Below, piece by piece: positions 25,806 to 64,000 of a stretch of 64,000 nt of DNA; within the stretch, counting starts at the first letter, position 1; each line of letters begins with the position of its first letter. The DNA lies in NCBI GenBank assembly GCA_965655095.1, contig OZ296648.1:50592001-50656000 (forward strand), given 5' to 3'. The DNA is from Haplodiscus bocki (taxonomy: Eukaryota). Under the pieces are notes generated by a model. The model worked only from the letters and a program-made list of their open reading frames with translations, did no database searches and had not been told where the DNA came from. The translations under genes and the position numbers were made by a program.

Positions 25806-26850
25806 CGCTGGTTAATGTGGGCGCATTTCTCGACGAAGAAATTTTAGTGTTTTGAAAATTACTTATGTATGAATGGTTCCGCGGTTTGGATGCAACAAGC
25901 AGCTGATTCAAATCCTGCTATGGGCCTGAATTTGTCCATTTATAGATACTCGTTAACGCATTTTTTTTTAACCAAAAAACCATTATTTTCTCAACAAAAT
26001 TCAGCGCTTTTTGATCATTGGGATCCATTTTGTCGGAAAAATTTCCAATTGCTACTGCATTTGAGGTAAAATGGTTTTCCGCAATTTTTTTTCAAAAATG
26101 TGTGAAAAATCATTTTTCCAAAGAACCCGTATGAAGTTGAAAGTTTGTAAATCTGCTGAAAAGTGTAATTGTAGGTGTTAAAAACTATTTTTTTTAGTTT
26201 TTGTTTGTCCGTTTTTCCAATACCCCCGTTTCTACTGGGTCAAAACAATTTGACTACGAAAAAACTGGTAGTGGAGCATATAGTCCTCTGATCCTCAGAC
26301 TGAAGAAAACCAGAAAGTGCATTCAGTTTTGAAATTCCTCTTTGTTGCTACTATTTCTTCTCCAAAGTTCCAAAGCTCTTTTTTCTCATCTATGTCTCAA
26401 TCCCAACGCTTGCACTTGCTACGCGTACTTCTTCAATATGGTGGTCCACTGCTTTTTGACCAGATAGTACTAATTTTCCTAAAGTGCTATCATTATTGAT
26501 CCACTTCGAATTTGAATATTTCATCTCAGCAACTCCAGAAACGATTTATTCTATCATGGTCTGAACAGAAAAATTCCTATACGTAAAAGCGAATCAATTC
26601 ACGAAAAAGTTTTGTTTTGAAGCATGTGTCAAGTTCCTGTTTTTCCAGCTTTGAGGAAAAGGTACTGAGACAAGTTTTCCTCGTTTTCAATCAAACAACA
26701 CAGAAATTACAGGTTTGGTTTTTTCCATTGGGGACTGAATCAAAAAAAAATTTTGCAGAGGAGCATTCGGTTACAAACTGGCTGAGTTTCACTCTTGAAC
26801 CACATCCATGAGAAACCGAAAAATCCCAAAGTGCTACTGATAATGTTTCT
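25806..26850. repeat. B-like (B') partial unit bridging the A' and C domains
   Basis: The sequence switches to B-type gttaatgtgggcgcatttctcgacg at ~25810 and grades into C-type (gaaacgaaattacg...) by ~26850. Confidence 0.75.
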
Positions 26851-41250: not shown

Positions 41251-44200
41251 GAGAAACGAAATTACGGTCCTCGATAACTACAGGTTTAATTTCTGTCATA
41301 GGGAATCTGTACGGAATAATTTTCACTTTCCTTGGATCATTGGTTGAAAAAATCATTGATTTTTCATCCTTCTATCACATTCCTGACATTCCGAATTTTC
41401 CGACAGATTCAACTTTTTTTGATAAAGCCTGATATTCACATTCAGTTATCTCGTTAACGATCGATTTGATTTCTTTATTAGCGTGCCAATCCTAAAATGT
41501 ATTTTAAGAAAAAAGATTTCGATTGAAACTCATTGAGTTAAATCTGTTCAACAAAATCCAGATAATAACAAAAAGCGAAGGTAGTTCTATCATTGATTTA
41601 TCGCGGTTTTCAAAATAATACTTCTCCGTAACTACAGGTTTGATACCCTCATCAAGCCTTCATTGGAGCCCTTTTTACTTTTGGTAGAGAGTTCGATGGA
41701 AATGTCTTTTAGGATGTTCTTTAAATCAGAATCTTGAGAGTCTGATCGGTGCAAAAGGAACTGTTGGGTCTGATCCATCTTGAGATACGAGTTGCTTTTT
41801 CTCCATAACGGCCAGTTTAAATTCATTCTTCACAGTCTCCATTGACAGATAATTAATTTGCTGAGGAATTCCGGTTTTAAAAAGCAGTGACTTAGTTGCT
41901 TGACCCGGAATCCTGATAGTTGGAAAAAGACAACGAATTGCTATTTTTTCTGACGTTCTTCTTTTCCTTCCTTTTCTTCAACTCATGGTTCTCTAATTTC
42001 GCTGACTAGTAAGCGCGCAATTTTCGGCGAATGAATTTCAGTGCTTTGAAAAATACATATACATGAACGTTTCCGCGGTTTGGAAGCAACACGCAGCAGA
42101 TTCGAATCCGGCTTCCGGCTTAAGTTTTTCCAATTTTAGATACTGGTTTACGGATTCTTCTATTTTTAAACGAAAAACAGATGTTTTCTCAACAAAAGTC
42201 AGCGATTTCCGATCAATGGGCTCTATTTTGTCGGAAAAATTTCCAGTTTCTAGGGTAATTGGAGCAAGTAGGTTTTTGGCATTTTTTTCACAAAAGTGGG
42301 CAAAAAGTGATTTTCCAAGGGATACGTATGAAGTTGAAAGTTTGTAAATCTGCTGAAAAGTATAATTGTAGGTGTTAATAACTATTTTTTTTCAATATCT
42401 GGTTGTCAGTTTTTACAGTACCCTTGTTTCTACTGTGTCAAAACAATTTGCCTGCAGAAAAACTGGTAGAGGAACATAAAGCTCTTGATCTTCAGAGTGA
42501 GGGAACCTAGAAAATGCATTCAGTCTCGAAATTCTTCTTGGTTGCTAGTATTTCTTCTCCAAAAGTCCAACACTCTTTTCTTTCCTCTATGTTTCAATCA
42601 GGTGGTTGGTACTATTTAAGCGTACTCCTTCAAAAACGGTGGATCAGAGCCTTGTGAACGGATAGTACTAATTTGCCGAAGCTGCAATCATTATTGAGCT
42701 GTCTCGTATTCGAAATCTTCCTCTCAGCAACTATTGGTTTGATTTTTTCCATCAAGGTCTCAACGGTAAAAATCACCTACTTAAAAGGACATAAAAACCA
42801 GAGAAAAAGTTTTTGCAACATGAGTCAAGTTCCTGTTTGTCCAGAGTTTGAGAAAAAGGTACTTAGACATGATTGTCTCGGTTTGCAAACTCCAACAACT
42901 CAAAAACTATAAATGTGTTTCCTTGCAATTGGGACTAATTGAAAACATTTTTCTTCGAGGGGCGCAGTTCGCAAAAAACTGGCCATTTTTCATGCCTGCA
43001 TCAGATACATGAGAAATCGAAAAAACCTAAAGAGCTACTGACAAGGTGTCTTCTTGAGAAACGAAATTACGTTCCTCGATAACTACAGGTTTAATTTGTC
43101 ATCCGGAATCTCTATGGAATGTTTTTCACTTTCAATGGAGCACCGGTTGGAAAAGTCATCGATTTTCATCCTTGTATCAAAATCCTGATAGTCCGCGTTT
43201 TCTGAAATGTTCAACTAGTTTTGATAAAGCTTGATATCCACATTCAATTTTCTCGGTAACGAACGATTTGATTTTTTCAGTGGCGTAGCATTCGTAAATT
43301 GTTTATTCAAAGAAAAGATTTTGATTGAAACTCCCTGAAACATCAAAATCCAGATAATAACAATAAACGAAGGTGGTTCCATCATTGATTTATCGCGATA
43401 TTCAGAATAATACTTCTCCGTAACTACAGGTTTGATACCCTCATCAAGCCTTCATTGGAACCATTTTTACTTTTTGGAGAGAGTTCGATGGAAATGTCAT
43501 TTAAGCTGTTCTTTAAATCAGAATCTTGAGAGTCTGACTGGTGCAAAAGGAGCTGTTAGTTCTGATCCATCTTTAGATACAAGTTGCCTTTTTTCCATAA
43601 CGGCCAGTTTAAATTCATTCTTCACAGTCTCGATTGACAGATAATTATTTTTGCTGAGGAATTCCGGTTTTAAAAAGCCTTGACTTTGTTACTTGACCCG
43701 AAATCCTGATAATTGGAAAAAGACAACGAATTGCTATTTTTTCTGACGTTCTTCTTTTCCTTCCTTTCCTTCAGCTCATGGTTCTCTTTTTTCGCTGACT
43801 AATGAGCGCGCATTTTTCGGCGAGTAAACTTCAGTGCTTTGAAAAATACATATACATGAACGTTTCCGCGGTTTGGAAGCAACACGCAGCAGATTCGAAT
43901 CCGGCTTCCGGCTTAAGTTTTTCCAATTTTAGATACTGGTTAACGGACTCTTTTTTTTAAACGAAAATCAGATGTTTTCTCAACAAAAGTCAGCGATTTC
44001 CGATCAGTGGGCTCTATTTTGTCGGAAAAGTTTCCGGTTTCTACAGTAATTGAATCGAGTAGGTTTTTCGCATTTTTTTTCACAAAAGTGGGCAAAAATT
44101 GATTTTCCAAGGGATACGTATGAAGATGAAAGTTTGTAAATCTGCTGAAAAGTATATTTGTAGGTCTTAATAACTAATTTTTTTGAATTTTTGTTTGTCA

Positions 44201-47200
44201 GTTTTTCCATTACGTTTATTTCTACTGTGTCAAAACAGTTCGTCTCCAGAAAAACTGGTAAAGGAACATAAAGTCCTTGATCTTCAGAGTGAAGAAAGCT
44301 AGAAAACGCATTCAGTCTCGAAATTCTTCTTGGTTACTAGTATTTCTTCTCCAAAAGTCCAACACTCTTTTCTGTCCTCTATGTCTCAATCAGGTGGTTG
44401 GTACTTTTTAAGCGTAATCCTTCAAAAACGGTGGTTCAGAGCCTTGTGAACGGATAGTACTAATTTTCCGAAGCTGCAATCATTATTGAGCTGTCTCGTA
44501 TTCGAAATCTTCGTCTCAGCAACTATTGGTTTGATTCTTTCCATCAATGTCTGAAGTGTAAAAGTCACCTACGTAAAAGGGACCAAAAACCAAAGAAAGA
44601 ACTTTTTGCAACATGTATCAAGTTCCTGTTTGTCCAGATTTTGAGAAAAAGGTACTTAGACATGATTGTTCCGGTTTGCAAACTCAAACAACTCAAAAAC
44701 TAAAACTTTGATTTCTTCCAATTGGGACACAATTGAAAACATTTTTCTTCGAGGGGCGCAATTGGTGAAAAAAAGGCCATTTTTCATGCCTGCATCACAT
44801 ACATGAGAAATCGAAAAAACCTAAAGAGCTACTGACAATGTGTCTTCTTGGGAAACGAAATTACGTTCCTCAATAACTACAGGTTCAATTTCTGTCATCC
44901 GGAATCTCTATGGAATGTTTTTCACTTTCAATGGAGCACTGGTTGGAAAAGTCATCGATTTCCATCCTTGTATCAAAATCCTGATAGTCCGAGATTTCCG
45001 AAATGTTCAACTAGTTTTGGTAAAGCTTGATATCCACATTCAATTTTCTCGGTAACGAACGTTTTGATTTTTTCATTGGTGTAGCAATCTTAAAACGTAT
45101 ATTTATAGAAGGGGTTTTGATTGAAACTCCTTGGAACATCAAAATCCAGATAATAACAAAAAACTAACGTGGTTCTAACATTGATTTATCGCGGTGTCCA
45201 AAATAATACTTCTCCGTAACTAACGGTTTGATACCCTCATCAAGCCTTTATTGGAACCATTTTTACTTTCGGAAGAGAATTCGATGGAAATGTCATTTAG
45301 GATGTTCTTTGAATCAGAATCTTGAGAGTCTGATCGGTGCAAAAGGAACTGTTGGTTCTGATCCATCTTGAGAAACAAGTTGCCTTTTCTCCATAACGGC
45401 CAGTTTAAATTCATTCTTCACAGTCTCCATTGACAGATGATTAATTTGCTGAGGAACTCCGGTTTTAAAAAGCAGTGACTTTGTTGCTTGACCGGGAATC
45501 CTGATAGTTGGAAAAAGACAACGAATTGCTATTTTTTCTGACGTTCTGCTTTTCCTTCCTTTTCTTCAACTCATGGTTCTCTAATTTCGCTGACTAGTGA
45601 GCGCGCAATTTTCGGCGAATGAATTTCAGTGCTTTGAAAAGTACATATACATGAACGTTTCCGCGGTTTGGAAGCAACACGCAGCAGATTCGAATCCTGC
45701 TTTCGGCTTAAGTTTTTCCATTTTTAGATACTGGTTAACGCACTCTTTTTTTTAAACGAAAATCAGATGTTTTCTCAACAAAAGTCAGCGATATCCAATC
45801 AGTGGGCTCTATTTTGTCGGAAAAGTTTCCGGTTTCTACAGTAATTGAATCGAGTAGGTTTTTCGCATTTTTTTTCACAAAAGTGGGCAAAAAGTGATTT
45901 TCCAAGGGATATGTATGAAATTGAAAGTATGTAAATCTGCTGAAAAGTATAAATGTAGGTCTTAATAACTAATTTTTTTGAATTTTTGGTTGTCAGTTTT
46001 CCAAGTACGTTTGTTTCTACTGTGTCAAAACAATTTGTCTCCAGAAAAACTGGTAAAGGAACATAAAGTCCTTGATCTTCAGAGTGAAGAAAGCTAGAAA
46101 ACGCATTCAGTCTCGAAATTCTTCTTGGTTAATAGTATATCTTCTCCAAAAGTCCAACACTCTTTTCTATCCTCTATGTCTCAATCAGGTGGTTGGTACT
46201 TATTAAGCGTACTCCTTCAAAAACGGTGGTTCAGAGCCTTGTGAACGGCTAGTAATAATTTGCGAGGCTGCAATCATTATTGAGCTGTCTCGTATTCGAA
46301 ATCTTCGTCTCAGCAACTATTGGTTTGATTTTTTCCATCAAGGTCTGAAGTGTAAAAGTCACCTACGTAAAAGGGAGCAAAAACCAAAGAAAGAACTTTT
46401 TGCAACTTGTATCAAGTTCCTGTTTGTCCAGATTTTGAGAAAAAGGTACTTAGACATGATTGTCCCGGTTTGCAAACTCCAACAACTCAAAAACTATAAA
46501 CTTGTTTTCTTGCAATTGGGACTCAATTGAAAACATTTTTCTTCGAGGGGCGCATTTGGTGAAAAACTGGCCATTTTTGATGCTTGCATCACATACATGA
46601 GGAATCGAGAAAAAACCTAAAAAGCTACTGGTAATGTGACTTCTTGAGAGACGAAATTACGTTGCTCGATAACTACGGGTTTAAATTCTGTCATCTGGAA
46701 TCTCTATAGAATGTTTTTCACTTTCAATGGAGCACTGGTTGGAAAAGTCTTCGATTTTCATCCTTGTATCAAAATCCTGATAGTACGAGTTTTCCGAAAG
46801 GTTCAACTATTTTTGATAAAGCTTGATATCCACATTCAATTTTCTCGGTAACGAACGATTTGATTTTTTCACTGGCGTAGCAATCTTGAAATGTATACAG
46901 AAATGATGTTGATTGAAACTCCTTGAAACATCAAAATCCGGATAATAACAAAAAGCGAAGGTGGTTCTATCATTGATTTATCGCGGTATTCAAAATAAAA
47001 CTTTTGTGTAACTACAGGTTTGATACCCTCATCAAGCCTTCATTGGAACCATTTTTACTTTTGGAAGAGAGTTCGATAGAATTTTCATTTTAGATATTCT
47101 TTAAATCAGAATCTTGAGAGTTTGATTGGCGCAAAAGGAACTGTTGGTTCTGATCCATCTTGAGAAACAAGTTGCATTTTCTCAATAACGGCCAGTTTAA

Positions 47201-50200
47201 ATTCATTCTTCACAGTCTCCATTGACAGATAATTAATTTGCTGAGGAATTCCGGTTTTAAAAAACATTGACTTTGTTACTTGACCGGGAATCCTGATAGT
47301 TGGAAAAAGACAACGAATTGCAATTTTTTTGACGTTCTCCTTTTCCTTCCTTCCCTTCAACTCATGGTTCTTTAATTTCGCTGACTAATGAGCGCGCATT
47401 TTTCGGCGAATAAAGTTCAGTGCTTTGAAAAGTACATACGCATGAAAGTTTCCGCGGTTTACAAGCAACAAGCAGCAGATTCGAGTCCTGCTTTCGGCTT
47501 AAGTTTTTCCATTTTTAGATACTGGTTAACGGATTCTTCTTTTTTTTTAAACGAAAAACAGATGTTTTCTCAACAAAAGTCAGCGATTTCCAATCAATGG
47601 GCTCTGTTTTGTCCGAAAAATTTCCAGTTTCTACAGTAATTGAATCGAGTAGGTTTTTCGCGTTTTTTTTCACAAAAGTGGGCAAAAAGTGATTTTCCAA
47701 GGGATACGTATGAAGTTGAAAATATGTAAATCTGCTGAAAAGTATAATTGTAGGTCTTAATAACTAATTTTTTTGCATTTTTGGTTGCCAGTTTTTCCAG
47801 TACGTTTGTTTCTACTGTGTCAAAACAATTTGTCTCCAGAAAAACTGGTAAAGGAACATAAAGTCCTTGATCTTCAGAGTGAAGAAAGCTAGAAAACGCA
47901 TTCAGTCTCGAAATTCTTCTTGGTTACTAGTATATCTTCTCCAAAAGTCCAACACTCTTTTCTTTCCTCTATGTCTCAATCAGGTGGTTGGTACTTATTA
48001 AGCGTACTCCTTCAAAAACGGTGGTTCAGAGCCTTGTGAACGGCTAGTACTAATTTGCCGAAGCTGCAATCATTATTGAGCTGTCTCGTATTCGAAATCT
48101 TCGTCTCAGCAACTATTGGTTTGATCTTTTCCATCAAGGTCTGAAGTGTAAAAGTCACCTACGTAAAAGGGAGCAAAAACCAAAGAAAGAACTTTTTGCA
48201 ACATGTATCAAGTACCTGTTTGTCCAGATTTTGAGAAAAAGGTACTTAGACATGATTGTCCCGGTTTGCAAACTCCAACAACTCAAAAACTATAAATTTG
48301 TTTTCTTGCATTTGGGACTCAATTGACAACATTTTTCTTCGAGGGGCGCATTTGGTGAAAAACTGGCCATTTTTGATGCTTGCATCACATACATGTGGAA
48401 TCGAGAAAAAACCTAAGAAGCTACTGGTAATGTGACTTCTTGAGAGACGAAATTACGTTGCTCGATAACTACGGGTTTAAATTCTGTCATCTGGAATCTC
48501 TATAGAATGTTTTTCACTTTCAATGGAGCACTGGTTGGAAAAGTCTTCGATTTTCATCCTTGTATCAAAATCCTGATAGTACGAGTTTTCCGAAAGGTTC
48601 AACTATTTTTGATAAAGCTTGATATCCACATTCAATTTTCTCGGTAACGAACGATTTGATTTTTTCACTGGCGTAGCAATCTTGAAATGTATACAGAAAT
48701 GATGTTGATTGAAACTCCTTGAAACATCAAAATCCGGATAATAACAAAAAGCGAAGGTGGTTCTATCATTGATTTATCGCGGTATTCAAAATAAAACTTT
48801 TGTGTAACTACAGGTTTGATACCCTCATCAAGCCTTCATTGGAACCATTTTTACTTTTGGAAGAGAGTTCGATAGAATTTTCATTTTAGATGTTCTTTAA
48901 ATCAGAATCTTGAGAGTTTGATTGGCGCAAAAGGAACTTTTGGTTCTGATCCATCTTGAGAAACAAGTTGCCTTTTCTCAATAACGGCCAGTTTAAATTC
49001 ATTCTTCACAGTCTCCATTGACAGATAATTAATTTGCTGAGGAATTCCGGTTTTAAAAAACATTGACTTTGTTACTTGACCGGGAATCCTGATAGTTGGA
49101 AAAAGACAACGAATTGCAATTTTTTTGACGTTCTTCTTTTCCTTCCTTTCCTTCAACTCATGGTTCTTTATTTTCGCTGACTAATGAGCGCGCATTTTTC
49201 GGCGACTAAATTTCAGTGCTTTGAAAAGTACATACGCATGAAAGTTTCCGCGGTTTACAAGCAACAAGCAGCAGATTCGAGTCCTGCTTTCGGCTTAAGT
49301 TTTTCCATTTTTAGATACTGGATAACGGATTCTTCTTTTTTTTAAACGAAAAACAGATGTTTTCTCAACAAAAGTCAGCGATTTCCAATCAATGGGCTCT
49401 GTTTTGTCCGAAAAATTTCCAGTTTCTACAGTAATTGAATCGAATAGGATTTTCGCATTTTTTTTTTCACAAAAGTGGGCAAAAAGTGATTTTCCACGGG
49501 ATACGTATGAAGTTGAAAGTATGTAAATCTGATGAAAAGTACAAATGTATGTGTTAATAACTAGTTTTTTTGAATTTCTGGTGGTCAGTTTTTCCAGTAC
49601 CTTCGTTTCTACTGTGTGAAAACAATTTGACTCCAGAAAAACTGGTAAAGGAACATAAAGTCCTTGATCTTCAGAGTGAAGAAAGCTAGAAAACGCATTC
49701 AGTCTCGAAATTCTTCTTGGTTACTAGTATATCTTCTCCAAAAGTCCAACACTCTTTTCTTTCCTCTATGTCTCAATCAGGTGGTTGGTACTTATTAAGC
49801 GTACTCCTTCAAAAACGGTGGTTCAGAGCCCTGTGAACGGCTAGTACTAATTTGCCGAAGCTGCAATCATTATTGAGCTGTCTCGTATTCGAAATCTTCG
49901 TCTCAGCAACTATTGGTTTGATTTTTTCCATCAAGGTCTAAAGTGTAAAAGTCACCTACGTAAAAGGGAGCAAAAACCAAAGAAAGAACATTTTGCAACA
50001 TGTATCAAGTTCCTGTTTGTCCAGATTTTGAGAAAAAGGTACTTAGACATGATTGTCCCGGTTTGCAAATTCCAACAACTCAAAAACTATAAATTTGTTT
50101 TCTTGCAATTGGGACTCAATTGAGAACATTTTTCTTCGAGGGGCGCATTTGGTGAAAAAGTGGCCATTTTTGATGCTTGCATCACATACATGAGGAATCG

Positions 50201-52400
50201 AGAAAAAACCTAAAAAGCTACTGGTAATGTGACTTCTTGAGAGACGAAATTACGTTGCTCGATAACTACGGGTTTAAATTCTGTCATCTGGAATCTTTAT
50301 AGAATGTTTTTCACTTTCAATGGAGCACTGGTCGGAAAAGTCTTCGATTTTCATCCTTGTATCAAAATCCTGATAGTACGAGTTTTCCGAAAGGTTCAAC
50401 TATTTTTGATAAAGCTTGATATCCACATTCAATTTTCTCGGTAACGAACGATTTGATTTTTTCACTGGCGTAGCAATCTTAAAATGTATAGAGAAATGAT
50501 GTTGATTGAAACTCCTTGAAACATCAAAATCCGGATAATAACAAAAAGCGAAGGTGGTTCTATCATTGATTTATCGCGGTATTCAAAATAAAAATTCTGT
50601 GTAACTACAGGTTTGATACCCTCATCAAGCCTTCATTGGAACCATTTTTACTTTTGGAAGAGAGTTCGATAGAATTTTCATTTTAGATGTTCTTTAAATC
50701 AGAATCTTGAGAGTTTGATTGGCGCAAAAGGAACTTTTGGTTCTGATCCATCTTGAGAAACAAGTTGCCTTTTCTCAATAACGGCCAGTTTAAATTCATT
50801 CTTCACAGTCTCCATTGACAGATAATTAATTTGCTGAGGAATTCCGGTTTTAAAAAACATTGACTTTGTTACTTGACCGGGAATCCTGATAGTTGGAAAA
50901 AGACAACGAATTGCAATTTTTTTGACGTTCTTCTTTTCCTTCCTTTCCTTCAACTCATGGTACTTTATTTTCGCTGACTAATGAGCGCGCATTTTTCGGC
51001 GACTAAATTTCAGTGCTTTGAAAAGTACATACGCATGAAAGTTTCCGCGGTTTACAAGCAACAAGCAGCAGATTCGAGTCCTGCTTTCGGCTTAAGTTTT
51101 TCCATTTTTAGATACTGGATAACGGATTCTTCTTTTTTTTAAACGAAAAACAGATGTTTTCTCAACAAAAGTCAGCGATTTCCAATCAATGGGCTCTGTT
51201 TTGTCCGAAACATTTCCAGTTTCTACAGTAATTTAATCAAGTAGGTTTTTCGAATTTTTTTTTCACAAAAGTGGGCAAAAAGTGATTTTCCACGGGATAC
51301 GTATGAAGTTGAAAGTATGTAAATCTGATGAAAAGTACAAATGTATGTGTTAATAACTAATTTTTTGAATTTCTGGTGGTCAGTTTTTCCAGTACCTTCG
51401 TTTCTACTGTGTGAAAACAATTTGACTCCAGAAAAACTGGTAGAGGAACATAAAGTCCTTGATCTTCAGAGTGAAGAAAGCTAGAAAACGCATTCAGTCT
51501 CGAAATTCTTCTTGGTTACTAGTATTTCTTCTCCAAAAGTCCAACACTTTTTTCTGTCCTCTATGTCTCAATCAGGCGGTTTGTACTTATTAAGCGTATT
51601 CCTTCAAAAATGGTGGTTCAGTGCCTTGTGAACGGATATTACTACTTTTCCGAAGCTCCAATCAATATTGAGCTGTCTCGTATTCGAAATCTTCGTCTCA
51701 GCAACTATTGGTTTGATTTTTTCCATCAAGGTCTGAACGGTAAAAGCCACCTACGTAAAAGGAGATAAAAACCAGAGAAAGAACTTTTTTCAACAAGTAT
51801 CAATTTCCTGTTTGACCAGAGTTTGAGAAAAAGGTACTTAAACAAGATTCTCTGGGTTTGCAAACTCAAACAACTCAAAAACTAAAACTTTGATTTCTTC
51901 CAATTGGGACACAATTGAAAACATTTTTCTTCGAGGGGCGCAATTGTTGAAAAAGTGGCCATTTTTCATGCCTGCATCACATACATGAGAAATCGAAAAA
52001 ACCTAAAGAGCTACTGACAATGTGTCTTCTTGGGAAACGAAATTACGTTCCTCAATAACTACAGGTTCAATTTCTGTCATCCGGAATCTCTATAGAATGT
52101 TTTTCACTTTCAATGGAGCACTGGTTGGAAAAGTCTTCGATTTTCATCCTTGTATCAAAATCCTGATAGTACGAGTTTTCCGAAAGTTTCAACTAGTTTC
52201 GATAAAGCTTGATATTCACATTCAATTTTCTTGGTAACGAACGGTTTGATTTCTTCATTGGCGTAGCAATGTTAAAATGTATATTTAGAGAAAAGATGTT
52301 GACTGAAACTCCTTGAGTAAAATCTGTTCATCAAAATCCAGATAACAACAAAAAGCGAAGGTGGTTCTATCATTGATTTAACGCGGTATTCAAAATATTA
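41250..52400. repeat. C subfamily domain 2 (~6 units)
   Basis: The same C diagnostics are present. Units at ~46.5-51.5 kb share private variants (ggtttacaagc, gattcgagtcc, gagttcgatagaattttc) at ~1797 bp spacing. Confidence 0.87.
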
Positions 52401-55400
52401 CTTCTCCGTAACTACAGGTTTGTTATACTCATCAAGCTTTCATTCGGACAATATTTACTTGTGGAAAATATTTCGATTGAAAAATCACTTGAAGTGAAGT
52501 GTCCCTAAATCAGAATTTTGAGAATCTGATTGGTGTAAAGGGGGCTATTAGTTTTGATTCATCTTGAGATACAAATTACCTTTTCCCCAGAGCGGTCAGC
52601 ATAAATTCTTTCTTCAGAGTTTCACTTGACAGATAATTAGTTTGCTGAGGCTTTTTAGTCTTGAAAAGCATTGATTTTACTCCTTGACCGGGTATGTTGA
52701 TAGTTGAAAAAAGACTACTTTTTCTGACGTTCTTCCTTTCCTTCAACTCATGGTTCTCAATTACCGATGACTAATGCGCGTGCAACTTGTGGAGAGGAAG
52801 TTTTAGTGCCTCGAAAATTACATAAGTATTAAAGTCTCCGAGGTTATGAAGCAACAAGCAGCAGGTTCGAATCCTGCATTCGGCCTTACTTTTTACAGTT
52901 TTAGACGCTGGTGAACGCCTTCTCTTTTTTAAACGAAAAAAAAACAATGTTTTCCCGACAAAATTCAATGCCTTTCAATCATTGGATTCAATGTCGTCGT
53001 GAAAATTTCCCTGTTTCTACCATAATTGAAGCAAACAGGTTTTCCGCCATCTTTTCCGGAAAAGCGGATAAAAATCGATTCTCCAAAAAGGCCGTAAGAA
53101 GTTGAAAAATTGTATATCTGCTAAAAAATATGGTTGAACGTGTAAATAGTCCATTTTGTTTTCAATTTTTGTTAAAAGTTTTTCCACTATCCTTGTTTCT
53201 CCAGGATAGTGGACCAATTTATTTCGAAGAAACTGCTATTTGAACATGTAGTTCTCTGATCCTCAGATTGAGAAAAGCAGGAAAGTGCATTTAGTTTTGA
53301 ACTTCCTCTTTGTTGCTACTCTTTTTTCTCTAAAAGTCCAAGGCTCATTTCTTTCATCTACTTCTCAGTAACAAGGTTTGTTCTTGTTAGGAGTACTCCT
53401 TCAAAAAATGGTGGTCCAGTGTTTTTTTACCGGATGGTACTAAACTTCCAAAGTGCTATCATTTTTTATCTATCTCGAATTCGAACTTTTCGTCTCACCA
53501 ACTGCAGAATTGATTTATTCCATCATGGTCTGAACAGAAAAGTTCTTATACGTAAAGGGGGATAAGTTTCAGACAACCATTTGTTTTGAAGCTTTGAAGC
53601 ATGATTCAAGTTCCTGTTTGTCCAGAGTTTGGAGAATTGGTACTGAGATAAGATTTTCTCGATTGTCAATCTCAAACAGCTCAGAAACTGCAGGTTTGAC
53701 TTCTTCCATTTGGGACTCAATCGAAAATTTTTTTCTTCGAGAGGTGTATTTGGTGAAAAACTGGCCAATTTTCATAGTTGCATCACATTCATGAAAAACC
53801 GAAAACTCCTAGAGTGCTACTAATAATGTGTCTTCTCAAGAAATGAAAATACGTTCCTCCATAAATACAGCTTTAAATACAGTCATCGGGAATCTCTAAG
53901 GAAAATTTTACACATTCAAGGGAACATTGGCTGAAAAAGTTAAAGATTTTCATCCTTGTATCAAAATCCTGCATTTCCGAAAATCTGAAAGGTTCCACTA
54001 TTTTTGGTACAACTCGATATTCACATTCATTTATTTCGGGAAATACTTGTTTGATTTCGTTCATCAGCGTGGCAATCCGAAAACGTGTACTTAGAGAAAG
54101 CACTTCAATTGAAACTCATTGGAATCGTTCTTTGCTCCAAAATCCAGATAATAACAAAATTCGAAGATTATTTTATTATCGATTTCTCACGGTTTTCAAA
54201 AGCATATTTATCCGAAACCACAGACTTGATTTCATTATCAAGTTTCCATTCGAGCATTTTTTGTTTGTGGAATAAACTTCGATTGAAATGTTGTTTAAGG
54301 TGTTTTTCAAATCAGAATTTTGACAATCTGAATGCTGCAAAACGAGTTATCTTTTCTGATTCATCTTGAGATACAAATTCTTTTCTTCTCCTGAACAGCC
54401 AGCTTCAGTTTCTTCACCAAGATCTCAAAACAAAAACCTTTAAAGGCCGAGGAACTATAGTTTTGAAAAACATTGATTTCGGTCCAATCGTTCGAATTTT
54501 GAATATTCGAAAGAGCCAAAGAACTGCTATACTATTTGATGTTCCTCGTTATCTTGAATTGTTGATTTCCATAACCGCTGAGACGGGTGCGCGCATTTTG
54601 CAGAGAAGAACCGCTGGTGCAGTGAAGAACGCATATGTATGGGCGTCAACGCAGAAAGGAGGCAACAAGAAGCAGATTATATTTCTGCTGTCGACCTTAA
54701 ATTAACAACTTTTAGATACTCGTTAACGCATTCTTTTCTAATACCAAAAAACAAAGGCTTTCTCGAAGAAATTCAACGTCTTTCAAACATTGGGCTCCAT
54801 TTCATCGGAAAACTTATCCTTTTTCCACCGTAATTGAAGCAAATTCTTTTTTTGCCACCTTTATCAGAAAAGCGTGTAAAAATCGAGTTGCCAAAAAAAA
54901 CGTAAGAAGTTGAAAGTCTGTAAATCTGATGATCAATGTAGTTGAAGGTGAAAAAACTGATATTTTCTTCATTGTTGGGTTATCAGTTTTTCCATTATCT
55001 TTGTTTTTCCAGAGTCCAAAAACGTTGTTTCGAAAAAAAACTGCTATTGGAACATGTAGTTCTTTGATGCTCGGGTTGAGAATTACCAGAAAGCGCGTTT
55101 AGTTTTGAGCTGTTTCTTTGTTGCTGCAGATTCTTCTTTGTTTCCGATACCTCTTCTCTCAAAACCAGTGCTCATTTCTTTTATCTATGTCTGAAAAAAC
55201 GGCTTGTACTTGTTAAGAGTATTCAATGAAACAAAGGTGGTCCAGTGCCTAGTGACCAGATAGTACTAGACTTCCCAAAAGTGCTATCATTACTGATCTA
55301 TTTCCTATTCGAACTCTTCGTCTCAGCAACTACAGGTTTCATTTGTTACATCAGAGTCTGAACGGAAAAACGTACACGTGTGGAAAGCAAAATACTTTCA

Positions 55401-58200
55401 ACAAATTTTGTTTCGAGCCATATGTGAAGTTCCTGGTTGTCAAGTGTTTTAGAAAAAGCTACTGAAACAAGTTGTTTTCGACTTCCAAACTGAGACAACT
55501 CAGAAATTACCGTTTTGATTTCTTCCACTCGTGACTCCATGGAAGCCATTCTTCTTGTAGAGGAGCTTTCAGCTGAAAACGTGCAGAAACTCGTGCTTGC
55601 ATCACATACAATCGAATCCGACAAATCATCAAGCGCTACTGATAATATGTCTTCTCGAGAATCGAATATAAAATGCTCGGTAACCACGGGTTTGATTTTT
55701 GTCTTCGGGGTTCCTACGGAACACTTTACAAATTAATTGGAGCATTGAATGGGAAATTTCTGATTTTCATCCCTGCATCAAAGATTTGACAGTCGGAAAG
55801 TTCCCAAATGTTACTTCAGTTTTGATAAATTTCGACATTCACATTCATTTAATTCGGTCAGTAGAGGTTTGATTTCTTTCATCAGTGTCTGAATCGAGAA
55901 AAAGGTACGTAGAAAAAAAGTATCGATTAGAAACTCAATGAATTAGTTATTTGCATCAAAATCAGGATAATAGCATTCATTGTACGTGGTTTTATTTTTG
56001 GTTTCTTTCGCCATTCACAATCGAATTCCTCCGTAACTACAGCTTTGATTTGATCCAAAAAGCTTTGAGTCTGACAATTTTTATTTATGCAAAAAAAACC
56101 GATTGAAATGCAATTAATTGTGTTTTTTGGATCAGATTTATGAGAATCCGAACCGTGCAAGAAGCGCTCATAATTCTGATTCATCTTGGTTTAAAAATTG
56201 TATTTTCCCTTTACTGCCAGCAAAATTTCCTTCATCAGAGTGTCACTTGATAGAAATTTAGTTTGCTGGGAAACTTTCGTTTTAAAAGGCATTGATTTTG
56301 TTCCTTGCTCCTGAAACTTGATAGCTCAAAAATGACAACGATTCGCTATTTCTTCTGACGTTTTTCCTTTTCTTCAACTCATGGTTCTCCATATCTGCTG
56401 ACTAATGCGCAAACATTTTCGGGAGCAGATTTTTGGTGATTTGAATATTACTTACGTACGAACGTCGCTGCGGTTACGAACCAGCAAGTAGCAATTTGGA
56501 ATCCTGTTGTCAGCCCTAATTTTGCCCATTTGTATAGAAATTCGTTTTTAAAATTTTAGAAACCGAAAAATTCGGGTTTTCTCGACAAAACTTGGCGTTT
56601 ACGGATGATTGTTCTCTTTTCGTTTGGAAAAATTGTTCAATTTCTGCAGTAATTGAAGCAAAATGACTTTCCCCGATGCCTCCCAGAAAATTTGGTAAAA
56701 ATGGATTTTCCAAAAAAGCCGTAAGGTGTTGAAAGTTTGTAAATCTGCTCAATATTGTTGTTGAATTTGTAGACAATTGTTTCTTTTCATATTGAGGTTA
56801 TCAGCTTTTCCAATATATTTCATTCCCGGAATCATTAAACGCTGTTTCGAAGAAACTGCTATTAGAACGTGTAGTTCTCTGATCCCCAGATTCAGAAATA
56901 CCAGAAAGCGCATTTAGTTTTGAGCTGCTTCTTTCTTGCAGCAATTTTTTCACTGTTGCTGCTATTTTCTCTCTAAAGTTCAAGGCTCATTTTTTTCATC
57001 TATGTCTCAATAAGAGGGCTTGTACTTGTTAAGAGTACTCCCTCAAAAAATGGTGGTCCAGTGCTTTGTGACCGGATAGTAGTAAATTTGAGAAAATGCT
57101 ATCAATATTGATCTCTCTCGAATTCGATCTCTTCGTCTCAGCAATAACACGATTGATTTTCTCCATCATGGTCTGCACGGAAAAATCCACAAGCGCTGAG
57201 GGGGATATTTTTCAGGAAAAATTTGTTTTGAAAAAAATTTATGTGTTAACAAGTTCCTGAGTTTGAGAAAAACATACTCAGTCAAGATTCTCTCGATTTT
57301 CAATCTCGCACAACTCAGAAACTACAGGTTTGATCTCTTACACTGAGGACCTAATTGAAAACTTTTTTCTTGGAGAGGACCTTTCGGTTAAAGTTGGCTG
57401 AGTTCCATGCTTGCATCACATTCATGAGAATCCGAAAAATCATAAAGTGCTACTCATAATGTGTCTTCTTGAGAAAAGATTTTATGTTTCTCGCTAACTA
57501 CAGGTTTAATTTGTGACATCGGGGTCTCAAAGAAAAGCTTTATTTTTTATTCGGAGCATGAGATGAAATATTCATTGATTTTTATCCCTGCGTCAAACTC
57601 CTGGCAGTCCCAAACTTCCGAAATGTTCTACTCGTTTTGATATGTCTCGATACTCACATTCAATTATCTCGACAACTATAGGTTTAATTCCTTTCATCAG
57701 CGTGGCAATCGAGAAATTATACTAAGAGATGATATCAACTGAAACTCGTTGAGTTAGCTCTTTGCTTCAAAACCCGGGTAAAAACAAAGTTCGATGTTGG
57801 TTTTCTCGTTGATTTCTCAAGTTATTCAGGATCATACTAATCTGTAACTACATGCTTGCTTTCTTTATCAAGCTCTCGATCGAACAAATTCTCCTTGTGA
57901 AAGAGAATTCGATTGAAAAGTCAATTAAAGTGATCTTTAAATCAAAAATCTGATAATCTGAATGCTGCCAAATGAGCTATTGTTTCTGATTCATCTTGCG
58001 ATACAAATTCTTTTCTTTTCCTGAATGGCCAGCATCAATTCCTTCAGAAAAGGTATCATAAAAGACCTTTGACTGCCGAGGAAAGGTTGTTTTTACAAAG
58101 ACTGATTTCGTTCTTGCATTCGAATTTTGATTTTTTGAAAAAACCAGAGATTTGCTATTGTTTCTGGTGTTCCTCGTATACTTGACTCATTGTTCTCCGT
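52400..58200. repeat. Three strongly diverged singleton ~1.81-1.82 kb units (transition layer)
   Basis: The landmarks stay collinear (52766, 54577, 56397, 58205; spacings 1811, 1820, 1808), but no near-identical full-length copy of these units exists elsewhere in the window. Confidence 0.85.
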
Positions 58201-61200
58201 AACCACTGACACAGATGCGTGCATTTTGGAAAGAAGAACCGTTGGTGCCCTGAAGAAGAACACATGTAAGGGCGTCACCGTCGTCCGGAGGCAAGAAGTA
58301 CCAGGTTCGATTGGTGCCGGCGGCCCTATTTTTTACTTGTTTTTAGATACTCGTTGACGCATTCTTAAGTACTAATACCTATGAAAACAGGCTTTTTTCA
58401 ACAAAACTTAGAGTTATGGATAAAAACGTTCCAGTTCACTCAACAAAATCATCCAGTTTCCGCAGCAATTTCAGCAATATGAATTTTCTCGGTCTTTTTT
58501 GGATGAGCTGCGAACTAAAAAGAAGTTTCGGAAATCACCAAAACAATTTGAAAATTTTTAAAACTTTCAGAAAAATCCATTACAGACGTAAACATTTGAC
58601 TTTTATTCAATCTTTGGGCAACAGTTTTTTCGACTGCCGTTGTTTTTCCAGGTTGAAAAACAGTTTATTTCGAAAATTGGGAAATACCGCTACTAAACAG
58701 GTAGTTCCCTGATCCCCGGATTGAGGGAACGCGAAAACGCACTAATCGTATTGAGCTTCGTTTGTGTTGCAATATTTTCTCCTATAACAATTCAAGGCTC
58801 AGGCCTTTCATCTAGATACCAATCAGAAGCCTCATAGTTGTGCAGTAGTTCACCATCAGAACATCAGTGGTCTTGTGTCTTCTCCTACAATCCAGTTAGT
58901 GCGAAAGATCCTGGAAGTATTGATTTGAATCGATATTCAAATGTTTTCTCAGAAACTACACGTTTGATTTCTTCCATTATGGTTTCAAGAGGAAAATATT
59001 TCTTGTAGACGACAAACCGTTCAAAAAGTCATGGAGTTTTGTGCTTGCATCAGATTAATGATAATCCGAACGCTCCAAAAAGTGCTACTATTAACGTGTT
59101 TTTCGAGAAATTAAATCATGTTTCTCGACACCTACCGGTTCGGTTTCTGTCAACGGGGTCTCAACGGTAAACTTTACACTTTCATTGGGGCATTGAATGA
59201 GAAAGTCATTCATTTGCATCCCTGCAACAAAACTGTGACAGTCCGAAAATTCCCGAAAATCCCTTTAGTTGTGATATATCTCAATATTCATTATCAATCA
59301 TCTCGGTAGCTACAGGTTTGAATTTCCTCATCAGTGTCTCAGTCAATAAATTTACATTCAGATAAAAAGTCGTTTCATAAGTTTTTCGGTTACTTTTTTT
59401 CAAAAAAAACGGATAAAAAAGATGGTGCTTTTATCATAGAATTCTCTCGGTATTCACAATCATACTTTTTTGTAATTACAGGCTTGACTGCTTCCATCAA
59501 GATTTGAGTCGAACAATTTCTGTTTGTGGAAAAAATTTCGATTGAAATGTCCTTAAAGGTATTCTTCAAATCAAAATTCTGATAATCTGAATGCTGCAAA
59601 ATGAGCTATCGTTTCTGATTCACCTTCAGATACAAATTGTTCCCTTCTCCTGAACGGCCGGCATGAAGTCCGTCATCAAGGTCCCAAAACAACGACATTT
59701 AATTGCCGAGGAATGATAGTTTTGAGAAACATCGATTTAGTCCTTGCATTGGAATTTTAATTTTTCGAAAAAACCAGAGGTTTGCTAATAGTTTTTGGTG
59801 TTCTTCGTATACTTGAATCATTGTTCTCCGTAACCGCTGACACAGATGCGTGCCTTTTGGAAAGAAGAACCGTTAGTGCCCTGAAGAAGAACACATGTAA
59901 GGGCGTCACCGTCGTCCGGAGGCAAGAAGTACCAGGTTCGATTGGTGCCGGCGGCCCTATTTTTTACTTGTTTTTAGATACTCGTTGACGCCTTCTTAAG
60001 TACTAATACCTATGAAAACAGGCTTTTTTCAACAAAAGTTAGAGTTATGGATAAAAACGTTCCAGTTCACTCGACAAAATCATCCAGTTTCCGCAGCAAT
60101 TTCAGCAATATGAATTTTCTCGGTCTTTTTTGGATGAGCTGCGAACTAAAAAGAAGTTTCGGAAATCACCAAAACAATTTGAAAATTTTTAAAACTTTCA
60201 GAAAAATCCATTACAGACGTAAACATTTGACTTTTATTCAATCTTTGGGCAACAGTTTTTTCGACTGCCGTTGTTTTTCCAGGTTGAAAAACAGTTTATT
60301 TCGAAAATTGGGAAATACCGCTACTAAACAGGTAGTTCCCTGATCCCCGGATTGAGGGAACGCGAAAACGCACTAATCGTATTGAGCTTCGTTTGTGTTG
60401 CAATATTTTCTCCTATAACAATTCAAGGCTCAGGCCTTTCATCTAGATATCAATCAGAAGCCTCATAGTTGTGCAGTAGTTCACCATCAGAACATCAGTG
60501 GTCTTGTGTCTTCTCCTACAATCCAGTTAGTGCGAAAGATCCTGGAAGTATTGATTTGAATCGATATTCAAATGTTTTCTCAGAAACTACACGTTTGATT
60601 TCTTCCATTATGGTTTCAAGAGGAAAATATTTCTTGTAGACGACAAACCGTTCAAAAAGTCATGGAGTTTTGTGCTTGCATCAGATTAATGATAATCCGA
60701 ACGCTCCAAAAAGTGCTACTATTAACGTGTTTTTCGAGAAATTAAATCATGTTTCTCGACACCTACCGGTTCGGTTTCTGTCAACGGGGTCTCAACGGTA
60801 AACTTTACACTTTCATTGGGGCATTGAATGAGAAAGTCATTCATTTGCATCCCTGCAACAAAACTGTGACAGTCCGAAAATTCCCGAAAATCCCTTTAGT
60901 TGTGATATATCTCAATATTCATTATCAATCATCTCGGTAGCTACAGGTTTGAATTTCCTCATCAGTGTCTCAGTCAATAAATTTACATTCAGATAAAAAG
61001 TCGTTTCATAAGTTTTTCGGTTACTTTTTTCAAAAAAAAACGGATAAAAAAGATGGTGCTTTTATCATAGAATTCTCTCGGTATTCACAATCATACTTTT
61101 TTGTAATTACAGGCTTGACTGCTTCCATCAAGATTTGAGTCGAACAATTTCTGTTTGTGGAAAAAATTTCGATTGAAGTGTCCTTAAAGGTATTCTTCAA

Positions 61201-64000
61201 ATCAAAATTCTGATAATCTGAATGCTGCAAAATGAGCTATCGTTTCTGATTCACCTTCAGATACAAATTGTTCCCTTCTCCTGAACGGCCGGCATGAAGT
61301 CCGTCATCAAGGTCCCAAAACAACGACATTTAATTGCCGAGGAATGATAGTTTTGAGAAACATCGATTTAGTCCTTGCATTGGAATTTTAATTTTTCGAA
61401 AAAACCAGAGGTTTGCTAATAGTTTTTGGTGTTCTTCGTATACTTGAATCATTGTTCTCCGTAACCGCTGACACAGATGCGTGCCTTTTGGAAAGAAGAA
61501 CCGTTGGTGCCCTGAAGAAGAACACATGTAAGGGCGTCACCGTCGTCCGGAGGCAAGAAGTACCAGGTTCGATTGGTGCCGGCGGCCCTATTTTTTACTT
61601 GTTTTTAGATACTCGTTGACGCCTTCTTAAGTACTAATACCTATGAAAACAGGCTTTTTTCAACAAAACTTAGAGTTATGGATAAAAACGTTCCAGTTCA
61701 CTCGACAAAATCATCCAGTTTCCGCAGCAATTTCAGCAATATGAATTTTCTCGGTCTTTTTTGGATGAGCTGCGAACTAAAAAGAAGTTTCGGAAATCAC
61801 CAAAACAATTTGAAAATTTTTAAAACTTTCAGAAAAATCCATTACAGACGTAAACATTTGACTTTTATTCAATCTTTGGGCAACAGTTTTTTCGACTGCC
61901 GTTGTTTTTCCAGGTTGAAAAACAGTTTATTTCGAAAATTGGGAAATACCGCTACTAAACAGGTAGTTCCCTGATCCCCGGATTGAGGGAACGCGAAAAC
62001 GCACTAATCGTATTGAGCTTCGTTTGTGTTGCAATATTTTCTCCTATAACAATTCAAGGCTCAGGCCTTTCATCTAGATATCAATCAGAAGCCTCATAGT
62101 TGTGCAGTAGTTCACCATCAGAACATCAGTGGTCTTGTGTCTTCTCCTACAATCCAGTTAGTGCGAAAGATCCTGGAAGTATTGATTTGAATCGATATTC
62201 AAATGTTTTCTCAGAAACTACACGTTTGATTTCGTCCATTATGGTTTCAAGAGGAAAATATTTCTTGTAGACGACAAACCGTTCAAAAAGTCATGGAGTT
62301 TTGTGCTTGCATCAGATTAATGATAATCCGAACGCTCCAAAAAGTGCTACTATTAACGTGTTTTTCGAGAAATGAAATCATGTTTCTCGACACCTACCGG
62401 TTCGGTTTCTGTCAACGGGGTCTCAACGGTAAACTTTACACTTTCATTGGGGCATTGAATGAGAAAGTCATTCATTTGCATCCCTGCAACAAAACTGTGA
62501 CAGTCCGAAAATTCCCGAAAATCCCTTTAGTTGTGATATATCTCAATATTCATTATCAATCATCTCGGTAGCTACAGGTTTGAATTTCCTCATCAGTGTC
62601 TCAGTCAATAAATTTACATTCAGATAAAAAGTCGTTTCATAAGTTTTTCGGTTACTTTTTTCAAAAAAAACGGATAAAAAAGATGGTGCTTTTATCATAG
62701 AATTCTCTCGGTATTCACAATCATACTTTTTTGTAATTACAGGCTTGACTGCTTCCATCAAGATTTGAGTCGAACAATTTCTGTTTGTGGAAAAAATTTC
62801 GATTGAAGTGTCCTTAAAGGTACTCTTCAAATCAAAATTCTGATAATCTGAATGCTGCAAAATGAGCTATCGTTTCTGATTCACCTTCAGATACAAATTG
62901 TTCCCTTCTCCTGAACGGCCGGCATGAAGTCCGTCATCAAGGTCCCAAAACAACGACATTTAATTGCCGAGGAATGATAGTTTTGAGAAACATCGATTTA
63001 GTCCTTGCATCGGAATTTTAATTTTTCGAAAAAACCAGAGGTTTGCTAATAGTTTTTGGTGTTCTTCGTATACTTGAATCATTGTTCTCCGTAACCGCTG
63101 ACACAGATGCGTGCCTTTTGTATAAAAGAACCGTTGGTGTATTGAAGAAAAGCACATGTAAGGGCGTCACCGTCGACAGGAGGCAAGAAGTCCCAGGTTC
63201 GAAATGTGCCGTCAGCCCTATTTCTTGTACTTGTTCTTAGATACTCGTTGACGCATTCTTAAGTACTAATACCTATGAAAACAGGCTTTTTTCAACAAAA
63301 CTTAGAGTTATGGATAAAAACGTTCCAGTTCACTCGACAAAATCATCCAGTTTCCGCAGCAATTTCAGCAATATGAATTTTCTCGGTCTTTTTTGGATGA
63401 ACTGCGAACTAAAAAGAAGTTTCGGAAATCACCAAAACAATTTGAAAATTTTCAAAACTTTCAGAAAAATCCATTACAGACGTAAACATTTGACTTTTAT
63501 TCAATCTTTGGGCAACAGTTTTTTCGACTGCCGTTGTTTTTCCAGGTTGAAAAACAGTTTATTTCGAAAATTGGGAAATACCGCTACTAAACAGTTAGTT
63601 CCCTGATCCCCGGATTGAGGGAACGCGAAAACGCACTAATCGTATTGAGCTTCGTTTGTGTTGCAATATTTTCTCCTATAACAATTCAAGGCTCAGGCCT
63701 TTCATCTAGATATCAATCAGAAGCCTCATACTTGTGCAAGAGTTCACCATCAGAACATCAGTGGTCTTGTGTCTTCTCCTACAATCCAGTTAGTGCAAAA
63801 GATCCTGGAAGTATTGATTTGAATCGATATTCAAATGTTTTCTCAGAAACTACACGTTTGATTTCTTCCATTATGGTTTCAAGAGGAAAATATTTCTTGT
63901 AGACGACAAACCGTTCCAAAAGTCATGGAGTTTTGTGCTTGCATCAGATTAATGATAATCCGAACGCTCCAAAAGGTGATACTTTTAACGTGTTTTTCGA
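58200..64000. repeat. D subfamily: homogeneous 1631 bp tandem repeat (~3.5 copies), ~9 sub-monomers per unit
   Basis: Near-identical copies, for example at 58416/60047/61678/63310 and 59118/60749. The unit is collinear with the 1.8 kb unit except for one ~182 bp gap. Confidence 0.95.

What the first reader, a model, noticed from the sequence alone, without database searches (positions are those of the whole stretch)
58860..59070. 10-mer to 9-mer switch: the 1631 bp unit lacks one sub-monomer in register
Seen: the distance from gtggtc to gtagacga is 320 bp in an A unit (1308 to 1628) but 138 bp in D (58867 to 59005), a 182 bp difference. D reads like the first sub-monomer up to attatggtttcaagaggaaaa (compare atcatggtctgaacagaaaa at ~1421), then continues like the next one (tcttgtagacga...gagttttgtgcttgcatca). 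1631/9 is about 181. Inference: out-of-register recombination between adjacent sub-monomers, or duplication of one, changed the repeat order while keeping the ~180 bp phase. The direction of change is unknown. This is independent support that the sub-monomer structure is real.
Basis: partly seen in the sequence, partly recalled or inferred. Interest (0 to 1): 0.7.

Follow-up and report, generated by a model that had tools for sequence, protein, structure and literature searches.

The report
Satellite repeat variant missing one sub-unit
At the right end of a long non-coding satellite array, the 1.8-kb repeat unit gives way to a 1.63-kb version that has lost exactly one ~177-bp sub-repeat, leaving a fused sub-repeat; this is the same routine change long known from human centromere repeats.

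Summary
The window is one head-to-tail, non-coding satellite. It holds 32 units of about 1797 bp (1 to ~58156), then at least 3.6 near-identical 1631-bp units (58157 to 64000).

All of the length deficit lies between two anchor sub-repeats. That interval is 513-540 bp in every long unit and 342 bp in the short unit. The rest of the unit has the same length in both.

The short unit has one 165-bp junction monomer, J (58893-59057, repeated every 1631 bp), where the long units have two monomers, M1 and M2. J resembles M1 on its left and M2 on its right.

Identity patterns favour a deletion (the long form is older) over a duplication. Trees cannot settle the direction.

Two corrections. Only 7 of the supposed 10 sub-monomers are detectably related; about 570 bp of each unit shows no monomer homology. 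The true period is about 177 bp, and the short-unit block starts mid-unit at about 58157, not at 58867.

This is an ordinary structural variant of a higher-order repeat with a hybrid monomer, as known from alpha satellite, in a new organism. Earlier notes of this scan report similar higher-order satellites elsewhere in this genome.

The parts
1..58156 (+). Array of 32 and a fraction long (~1790-1826 bp) satellite units in several families. Units u29-u32 (51613-58156) are old singletons.
   Evidence: BLAST of unit 1308-3104 against the window, all hits on the plus strand. Unit lengths and clusters. No ORF of 120 aa or more, no Rfam match, no tRNA.
58157..64000 (+). Block of 1631-bp units (D), at least 3.6 copies, 98-99.7% identical to each other. 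It starts mid-unit and runs off the window end.
   Evidence: 58157-58866 is 98.7% identical to 61419-62128, while 57053-58156 is only about 70-81% identical. Ungapped identity at offset 1631 is 97-100% from 58200 on.
58893..59057 (+). Junction (hybrid) monomer J, copy 1, 165 bp. It stands where the long units have M1 plus M2.
   Evidence: nhmmer monomer map: D has 6 hits per unit against 7 in the long units. Log-odds and HMMER segment scores.
58948..58998 (+). Interval that holds the M1-to-M2 switch. It is the conserved monomer core. Best point estimate is after 58990-58995.
   Evidence: Single-gap alignment optima at 58945-52 and 58995-98. Log-odds change point. In the core J is 71% identical to both M1 and M2, so the break cannot be resolved further.
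60524..60688 (+). J copy 2, identical to copy 1.
   Evidence: 0 mismatches. Error-free short-read unitigs 60374-60671 and 60374-60686 bridge the break.
62155..62319 (+). J copy 3, 1 mismatch to copies 1 and 2.
63787..63951 (+). J copy 4. The end coordinate is inferred from the 165-bp length.
   Evidence: nhmmer hit 63792-63904 with implied start 63787.
1328..1504 (+). Monomer M1 in the reference long unit u01.
   Evidence: nhmmer implied starts 1328 and 1505. The M1 class is a 100/100 clade.
1505..1680 (+). Monomer M2 in the reference long unit u01.
   Evidence: nhmmer implied starts 1505 and 1681. The M2 class is a 100/100 clade.
57185..57363 (+). The 179 bp of the neighbouring long unit u32 (3' part of its M1 plus 5' part of its M2) that have no counterpart in D.
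   Evidence: Best single-gap alignment, score 118, the highest of the 32 references. The same gap, 57186-57363, appears in the pairwise alignment.
2386..2962 (+). Stretch of about 577 bp in unit u01 with no detectable homology to the monomers. It is present in every unit; in D copy 2 it is 61387-61977.
   Evidence: No monomer-HMM hit above shuffled controls. Only weak in-register hits at unit offset 1080 in u30 and u32. Profiles M7-M9 hit only themselves.

Best explanation
The window is a non-coding higher-order satellite. An old monomer of about 177 bp was multiplied and its copies diverged to about 35-60% identity. A block of about 1.8 kb then became the repeating unit; it holds seven recognisable monomers, M0 to M6, plus about 570 bp of unassigned sequence. 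In one lineage of units a stretch one monomer period long (~177-179 bp) was lost. It ran from inside M1 to the matching position inside M2, so the 5' part of M1 became fused in register to the 3' part of M2, giving monomer J. The 1631-bp unit that resulted was later amplified into its own young, nearly identical block, which now abuts the old units at about 58157. Shown here: the single localised gap, its length of one period, the M1-left and M2-right make-up of J, and the amplification. Inferred: the direction (deletion) and the mechanism. The mechanism was a misalignment by one monomer guided by the conserved core, by unequal sister-chromatid or intrastrand exchange or by replication slippage. 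Today's M1 and M2 share in-register exact matches of only 5-7 bp, so a short-homology route is at least as likely as classical homologous crossover.
For: Periods of 1797 and 1631 bp. Monomer homology at offsets that are multiples of about 177 bp, from a single-sequence seed with E from 1.7e-8 to 0.023 and from cross-hits between positional profiles. Seven monomer hits per long unit against six per D unit. The deficit is confined to the M0-M3 interval, 519 against 342 bp. Single-gap length of 173-188 bp against all 32 references. Positional clades at 100% support that include every D monomer except J. Log-odds change point of 118.6 bits, p 0.0006 to 0.011. Diagnostic sites run mostly M1-type on the left and all M2-type on the right, p 0.017. 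HMMER: left part M1 30.8 bits, right part M2 9.2 bits with no M1 hit. Segment identities that fit a hybrid formed after M1 and M2 had diverged. The junction is present in error-free short-read unitigs.
Against: The 5' third of J is not uniquely M1-like. Class M4 scores 8.7 bits better in one profile test and 5 bits worse in HMMER. Segment trees have no power. The AU test does not reject M1 and M2 as sister classes (p 0.39), so tree topology alone does not exclude a duplication origin. No long-form parent with D-like M1 and M2 is in the window; the nearest long unit is only about 70% identical in that region. The sequencing runs come from one study and may include the individual that was assembled, so they are not independent support.
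Confidence: 0.8

Rival explanations
1. The short unit is ancestral. The long unit arose by duplication of a J-like monomer, whose two daughters became M1 and M2.
For: Deep branching among monomer classes is unresolved, and M1 plus M2 as one clade is not rejected (p-AU 0.39). With J included, M1+M2+J form one side of a branch at 77/85 support. D_M0 is sister to all other M0 copies.
Against: J would then resemble both daughters along its whole length. Instead J-right to M1-right is 37%, about the same as M1 to M2 at 35%, and J-left to M2-left is 34%, below M1 to M2 at 41%. The M1-like and M2-like signal is spatially split (p 0.0006-0.011). M1 and M2 sit on long separate stems of 0.36 and 0.28. 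All 32 long units, which differ from each other by up to 35%, carry both monomers. D_M6 is nested inside the long-unit M6 copies at 99/100.
Confidence: 0.1
2. J is simply the M2 orthologue, or simply the M1 orthologue, with a fast-evolving end. A whole monomer was removed at monomer borders and there is no hybrid.
For: In the full-length tree J is a weak sister of M2 (83/60). Whether a junction counts as hybrid depends on the monomer phase chosen (PMC9549924).
Against: Pure M1 or pure M2 is about 118 bits worse than the hybrid. The left part of J aligns to M2 only over the conserved core, profile positions 66-101, but to M1 over positions 18-112. Breakpoints at the monomer border lie outside the 3-point score interval for nearly all references.
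Confidence: 0.07
3. The 1631-bp unit is an assembly artefact, a collapse or mis-join in a hard repeat.
For: Satellite arrays are error-prone, and only contigs, not raw reads, were available.
Against: There are three complete copies with an identical junction. Error-free unitigs from three runs bridge the junction, and another bridges the left edge of the block at 58157. D-type unitigs carry several times the word depth of the flank.
Confidence: 0.03

Closest known systems
Structural variants of alpha-satellite higher-order repeats with hybrid monomers (primates)
   Same: The variant differs from the main unit by one whole monomer. The junction is a fusion of part of one monomer to part of its neighbour, with monomer length roughly kept. 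The variant unit is then amplified locally. This pattern is described in PMC9549924 (section 2.5.2) and PMC9248890.
   Different: This is an unrelated sequence in a non-primate animal (earlier notes of this scan say coral; not verified here). The monomers are far more diverged, at 35-60% identity against 60-80% within an alpha-satellite HOR. About a third of the unit has no recognisable monomer structure. No link to a centromere is shown.
Regimented higher-order satellite arrays found across eukaryotes
   Same: Monomers of about nucleosome length, kilobase-scale periodic units, and young homogeneous blocks next to old diverged ones (bioRxiv 10.64898/2026.09.17.752431).
   Different: That survey scores HORs from monomers at least 96% alike. 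The monomers here are too diverged for such detection, and the periodicity is visible only with profile searches.
Other higher-order satellites noted by this scan in the same genome (s1-354055, s1-381257, s1-381258)
   Same: Monomers of about 172-180 bp hidden under units of 8 to 17 monomers.
   Different: Those lie at other loci.

Membership tests
Higher-order repeat (HOR) satellite | Tandem monomers of about nucleosome length that are homologous to each other. | tested here: met
   Single-seed nhmmer hits at offsets of 176, 353, 530, 707 and 883 bp. This holds for 7 monomers only; 1080-1650 of the unit is not detectably related.
Higher-order repeat (HOR) satellite | Multi-monomer units are much more alike than the monomers within a unit, and monomers cluster by position. 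| tested here: met
   Units are 64-99.7% identical, while monomers within a unit are about 35-62% identical. All seven positional classes are clades at 100% support.
HOR structural variant with hybrid monomer | The length difference is a whole number of monomers at a single site. | tested here: met
   The M0-to-M3 interval is 519 bp (median) in the long units and 342 bp in D, while the rest of the unit is equal. The gap is 173-188 bp against all 32 references.
HOR structural variant with hybrid monomer | The junction monomer is a prefix of one class joined to a suffix of the adjacent class, in register. | tested here: met
   The prefix assignment is weaker than the suffix assignment (M1 against M4 is ambiguous).
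HOR structural variant with hybrid monomer | The variant derives from the longer canonical unit (direction of change). | tested here: inconclusive
   Segment identities favour deletion. Tree tests cannot reject the alternative.
Centromeric satellite | Association with centromeric histone or the kinetochore, or position at the primary constriction. | not testable with these tools
   No chromatin or cytological data were available.
Primate alpha satellite | Sequence homology to the 171-bp alpha monomer. | not tested
   No comparison was run. The resemblance is in layout only.

The most novel reading that the evidence does not exclude
The deletion kept the monomer register although M1 and M2 share only 5-7 bp exact matches and about 35-62% identity. 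That could mean the register is imposed by something other than sequence homology. For example, phased nucleosomes or a bound protein on the conserved core (around TTGATTT) could set where breaks and rejoining occur, or selection could remove out-of-phase variants.
Probability: 0.1. Interest if true: 0.55.

Novelty: new member of a known kind. Interest (0 to 1): 0.28.

Why it matters
The variant gives a second, independent line of support that the cryptic ~177-bp sub-structure of this 1.8-kb satellite is real. It also shows that the step known from primate centromere repeats, loss of one monomer followed by local amplification, operates in a distant animal with much more diverged monomers. Beyond that it is an expected feature of satellite evolution. 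It says nothing about function.

Tried and rejected
- Tandem Repeats Finder found nothing: the period is above 500 bp and the monomers are too diverged.
- There are no ORFs of 120 aa or more, no Rfam families and no tRNAs, so the unit is not a gene cluster.
- Trees built on thirds of the monomer had no power to place the parts of J.
- AU tests could not separate the deletion and duplication topologies.
- Global alignments with cheap gaps broke the one gap into many pieces and were uninformative. Anchor spacing and a single-gap alignment replaced them.
- Searches for monomer homology in unit positions 1080-1650 failed.
- A look-up of look-alike stretches in the scan's notes returned nothing.
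- The runs gave contig word depths only, so copy number is only a rough hint: D-type unitigs carry about 4-10 times the depth of the flank.
- I found no paper on satellites of this organism group with this structure.
- A repeat scan within one D unit showed nothing notable.

Full report
**What is in the window.** The whole 64-kb window is one head-to-tail, AT-rich (64%) tandem array on one strand.
- It has no ORF of 120 aa or more, no Rfam family and no tRNA.
- K-mer spacing is about 1797 bp from the start to ~57000 and 1631 bp from ~58000 to the end.
- The long units fall into several families that are 64-99% identical. The last four (u29-u32, 51613-58156) are old singletons.

gtggtc starts at 1308 and gtagacga at 1628. 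The same motifs start at 58867 and 59005. That gives 320 against 138 bp.

**Sub-monomers.**
- Autocorrelation shows a weak 177-bp period: 0.30 against a background of 0.27.
- A single 177-bp seed from the unit consensus finds relatives at offsets of 176, 353, 530, 707 and 883 bp, with E from 1.7e-8 to 0.023. Positional profiles cross-hit each other only at multiples of about 177 bp.
- An iterated HMM finds seven monomers per long unit. These are M0, which is weak, and M1 to M6.
- Unit positions 1080-1650 (about 570 bp) give nothing above shuffled controls. The only exceptions are two weak in-register hits at offset 1080.
- So the sub-monomer structure is real, but '10-mer' is shown for only seven positions. 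The period is about 177 bp rather than 180-182.

**The gap.**
- The short unit has six monomer hits where the long units have seven.
- The M0-to-M3 interval is 513-540 bp (median 519) in all 32 long units and 342 bp in D. The M3-to-next-M0 interval is 1272-1290 bp in the long units and 1289-1290 bp in D. The whole deficit of about 177 bp is therefore at one site.
- A dynamic-programming alignment that allows one large gap gives 173-188 bp (mode 177-180) against each of the 32 references. The optima are at D 58945-58952 or 58995-58998.

**The junction monomer J (58893-59057).**
- In a tree of 76 monomers every positional class is a clade at 100% support, and each contains its D orthologue. J alone has no well-supported placement; it is a weak sister of M2 at 83/60.
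- Profile log-odds for M1 against M2 accumulate to +59 bits up to 58995 and -60 bits after it. The hybrid is about 118 bits better than either pure assignment. Permutation p is 0.0006 for columns and 0.007-0.011 for blocks.
- Sites where M1 and M2 are both conserved but differ run mostly M1-type on the left and all M2-type on the right, p 0.017.
- HMMER gives the left part as M1 30.8, M4 25.9 and M2 20.5 bits. It gives the right part as M2 9.2 and M3 6.8 bits, with no hit for M1.
- As a control, D's M3 to M6 match their own class in all three segments by wide margins.
- Segment identities:

| Segment | J to M1 | J to M2 | M1 to M2 |
|---|---|---|---|
| 5' part | 51% | 34% | 41% |
| Conserved core, 58948-58995 | 71% | 71% | 62% |
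| 3' part | 37% | 57.5% | 35% |

- The switch therefore lies in the conserved core, 58948-58998.
- The 5' third of J is only loosely assigned: M4 scores slightly better than M1 in one test. M1 is preferred because of its position between M0 and M3.
- J is 165 bp long rather than 177, mainly because of a separate 9-bp gap near 58904.

**Direction of change.**
- If J were ancestral to M1 and M2, it should resemble both along its whole length. It does not.
- All 32 long units, some 35% diverged from each other, carry both monomers. D_M6 is nested inside the long-unit M6 copies.
- However, the deep branches among monomer classes are unresolved. M1 plus M2 as sisters is not rejected (p 0.39).
- I favour deletion at roughly 8 to 1.

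**Mechanism (inferred).** The cause was a misalignment by one monomer, guided by the conserved core. In-register exact matches between today's M1 and M2 are only 5-7 bp. Slippage or short-homology joining is therefore as plausible as classical unequal crossover.

**The short-unit block.**
- 58157-58866 is 98.7% identical to the matching part of a later D copy. 57053-58156 is only about 70-81% identical. Identity at offset 1631 is 97-100% from 58200 onward.
- The D block therefore starts mid-unit at about 58157 and runs off the window end. No close long-form parent is present in the window.
- The J copies differ by 0-1 bases.

**Reads.** Only contigs of four runs (two samples, one study) were served.
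- Error-free unitigs 60374-60671 and 60374-60686 bridge the junction. Unitig 57501-58253 bridges the left edge of the block.
- D-type unitigs have several times the word depth of flank unitigs.
- This argues against an assembly artefact and hints at a small block of the order of 5-20 copies. The depth figures are not copy numbers, and the runs may not be independent of the assembly.

**Comparison with what is known.**
- Whole-monomer in/dels in higher-order repeats, and hybrid monomers that keep the monomer length, are described for human alpha satellite (PMC9549924, PMC9248890).
- Regimented higher-order repeats are reported as common across eukaryotes (bioRxiv 10.64898/2026.09.17.752431).
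- Earlier notes of this scan describe other 172-180-bp higher-order satellites in the same genome, said there to be a coral. I did not verify the organism or the relationship between those families and this one.

**Verdict.** It is a new example of a known kind of change and of modest interest.

Noticed in passing
window 2386-2962 (unit u01); the same part of every unit, e.g. 61387-61977 in D copy 2: About 570-590 bp of each unit has no detectable homology to the 177-bp monomers. It could be about three monomers degraded beyond recognition or a foreign insert that became part of the unit.
   Followed up: partly
window ~24000-27900 and ~38400-42300: A segmental duplication eight units apart (offset 14,393-14,396 bp), 84-98% identical in 500-bp bins. 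Units u14 and u15 match u22 and u23 at 96-97%.
   Followed up: partly
window 51613-58156 (units u29-u32): Four consecutive singleton units are only 64-82% identical to any other unit. They form an old, non-homogenised zone between the C-type block and the young D block.
   Followed up: partly
window 58157: Sharp left edge of the D block in mid-unit (unit position ~1105). Identity to the next copy jumps from about 61-82% to 97-100%. A single-copy-depth unitig spans the edge.
   Followed up: yes
window 1-21000: Two unit families (clusters 3 and 4, 84% alike) alternate irregularly. This gives k-mer periods of 3.6, 5.4 and 7.2 kb, a further level of repeat order above the 1.8-kb unit.
   Followed up: no
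window 1505-1545 and the same part of M2 in all long units: The first ~40 positions of monomer class M2 do not match the monomer HMM in any family, unlike all other classes. This is a class-specific replaced or fast-evolving segment.
   Followed up: no
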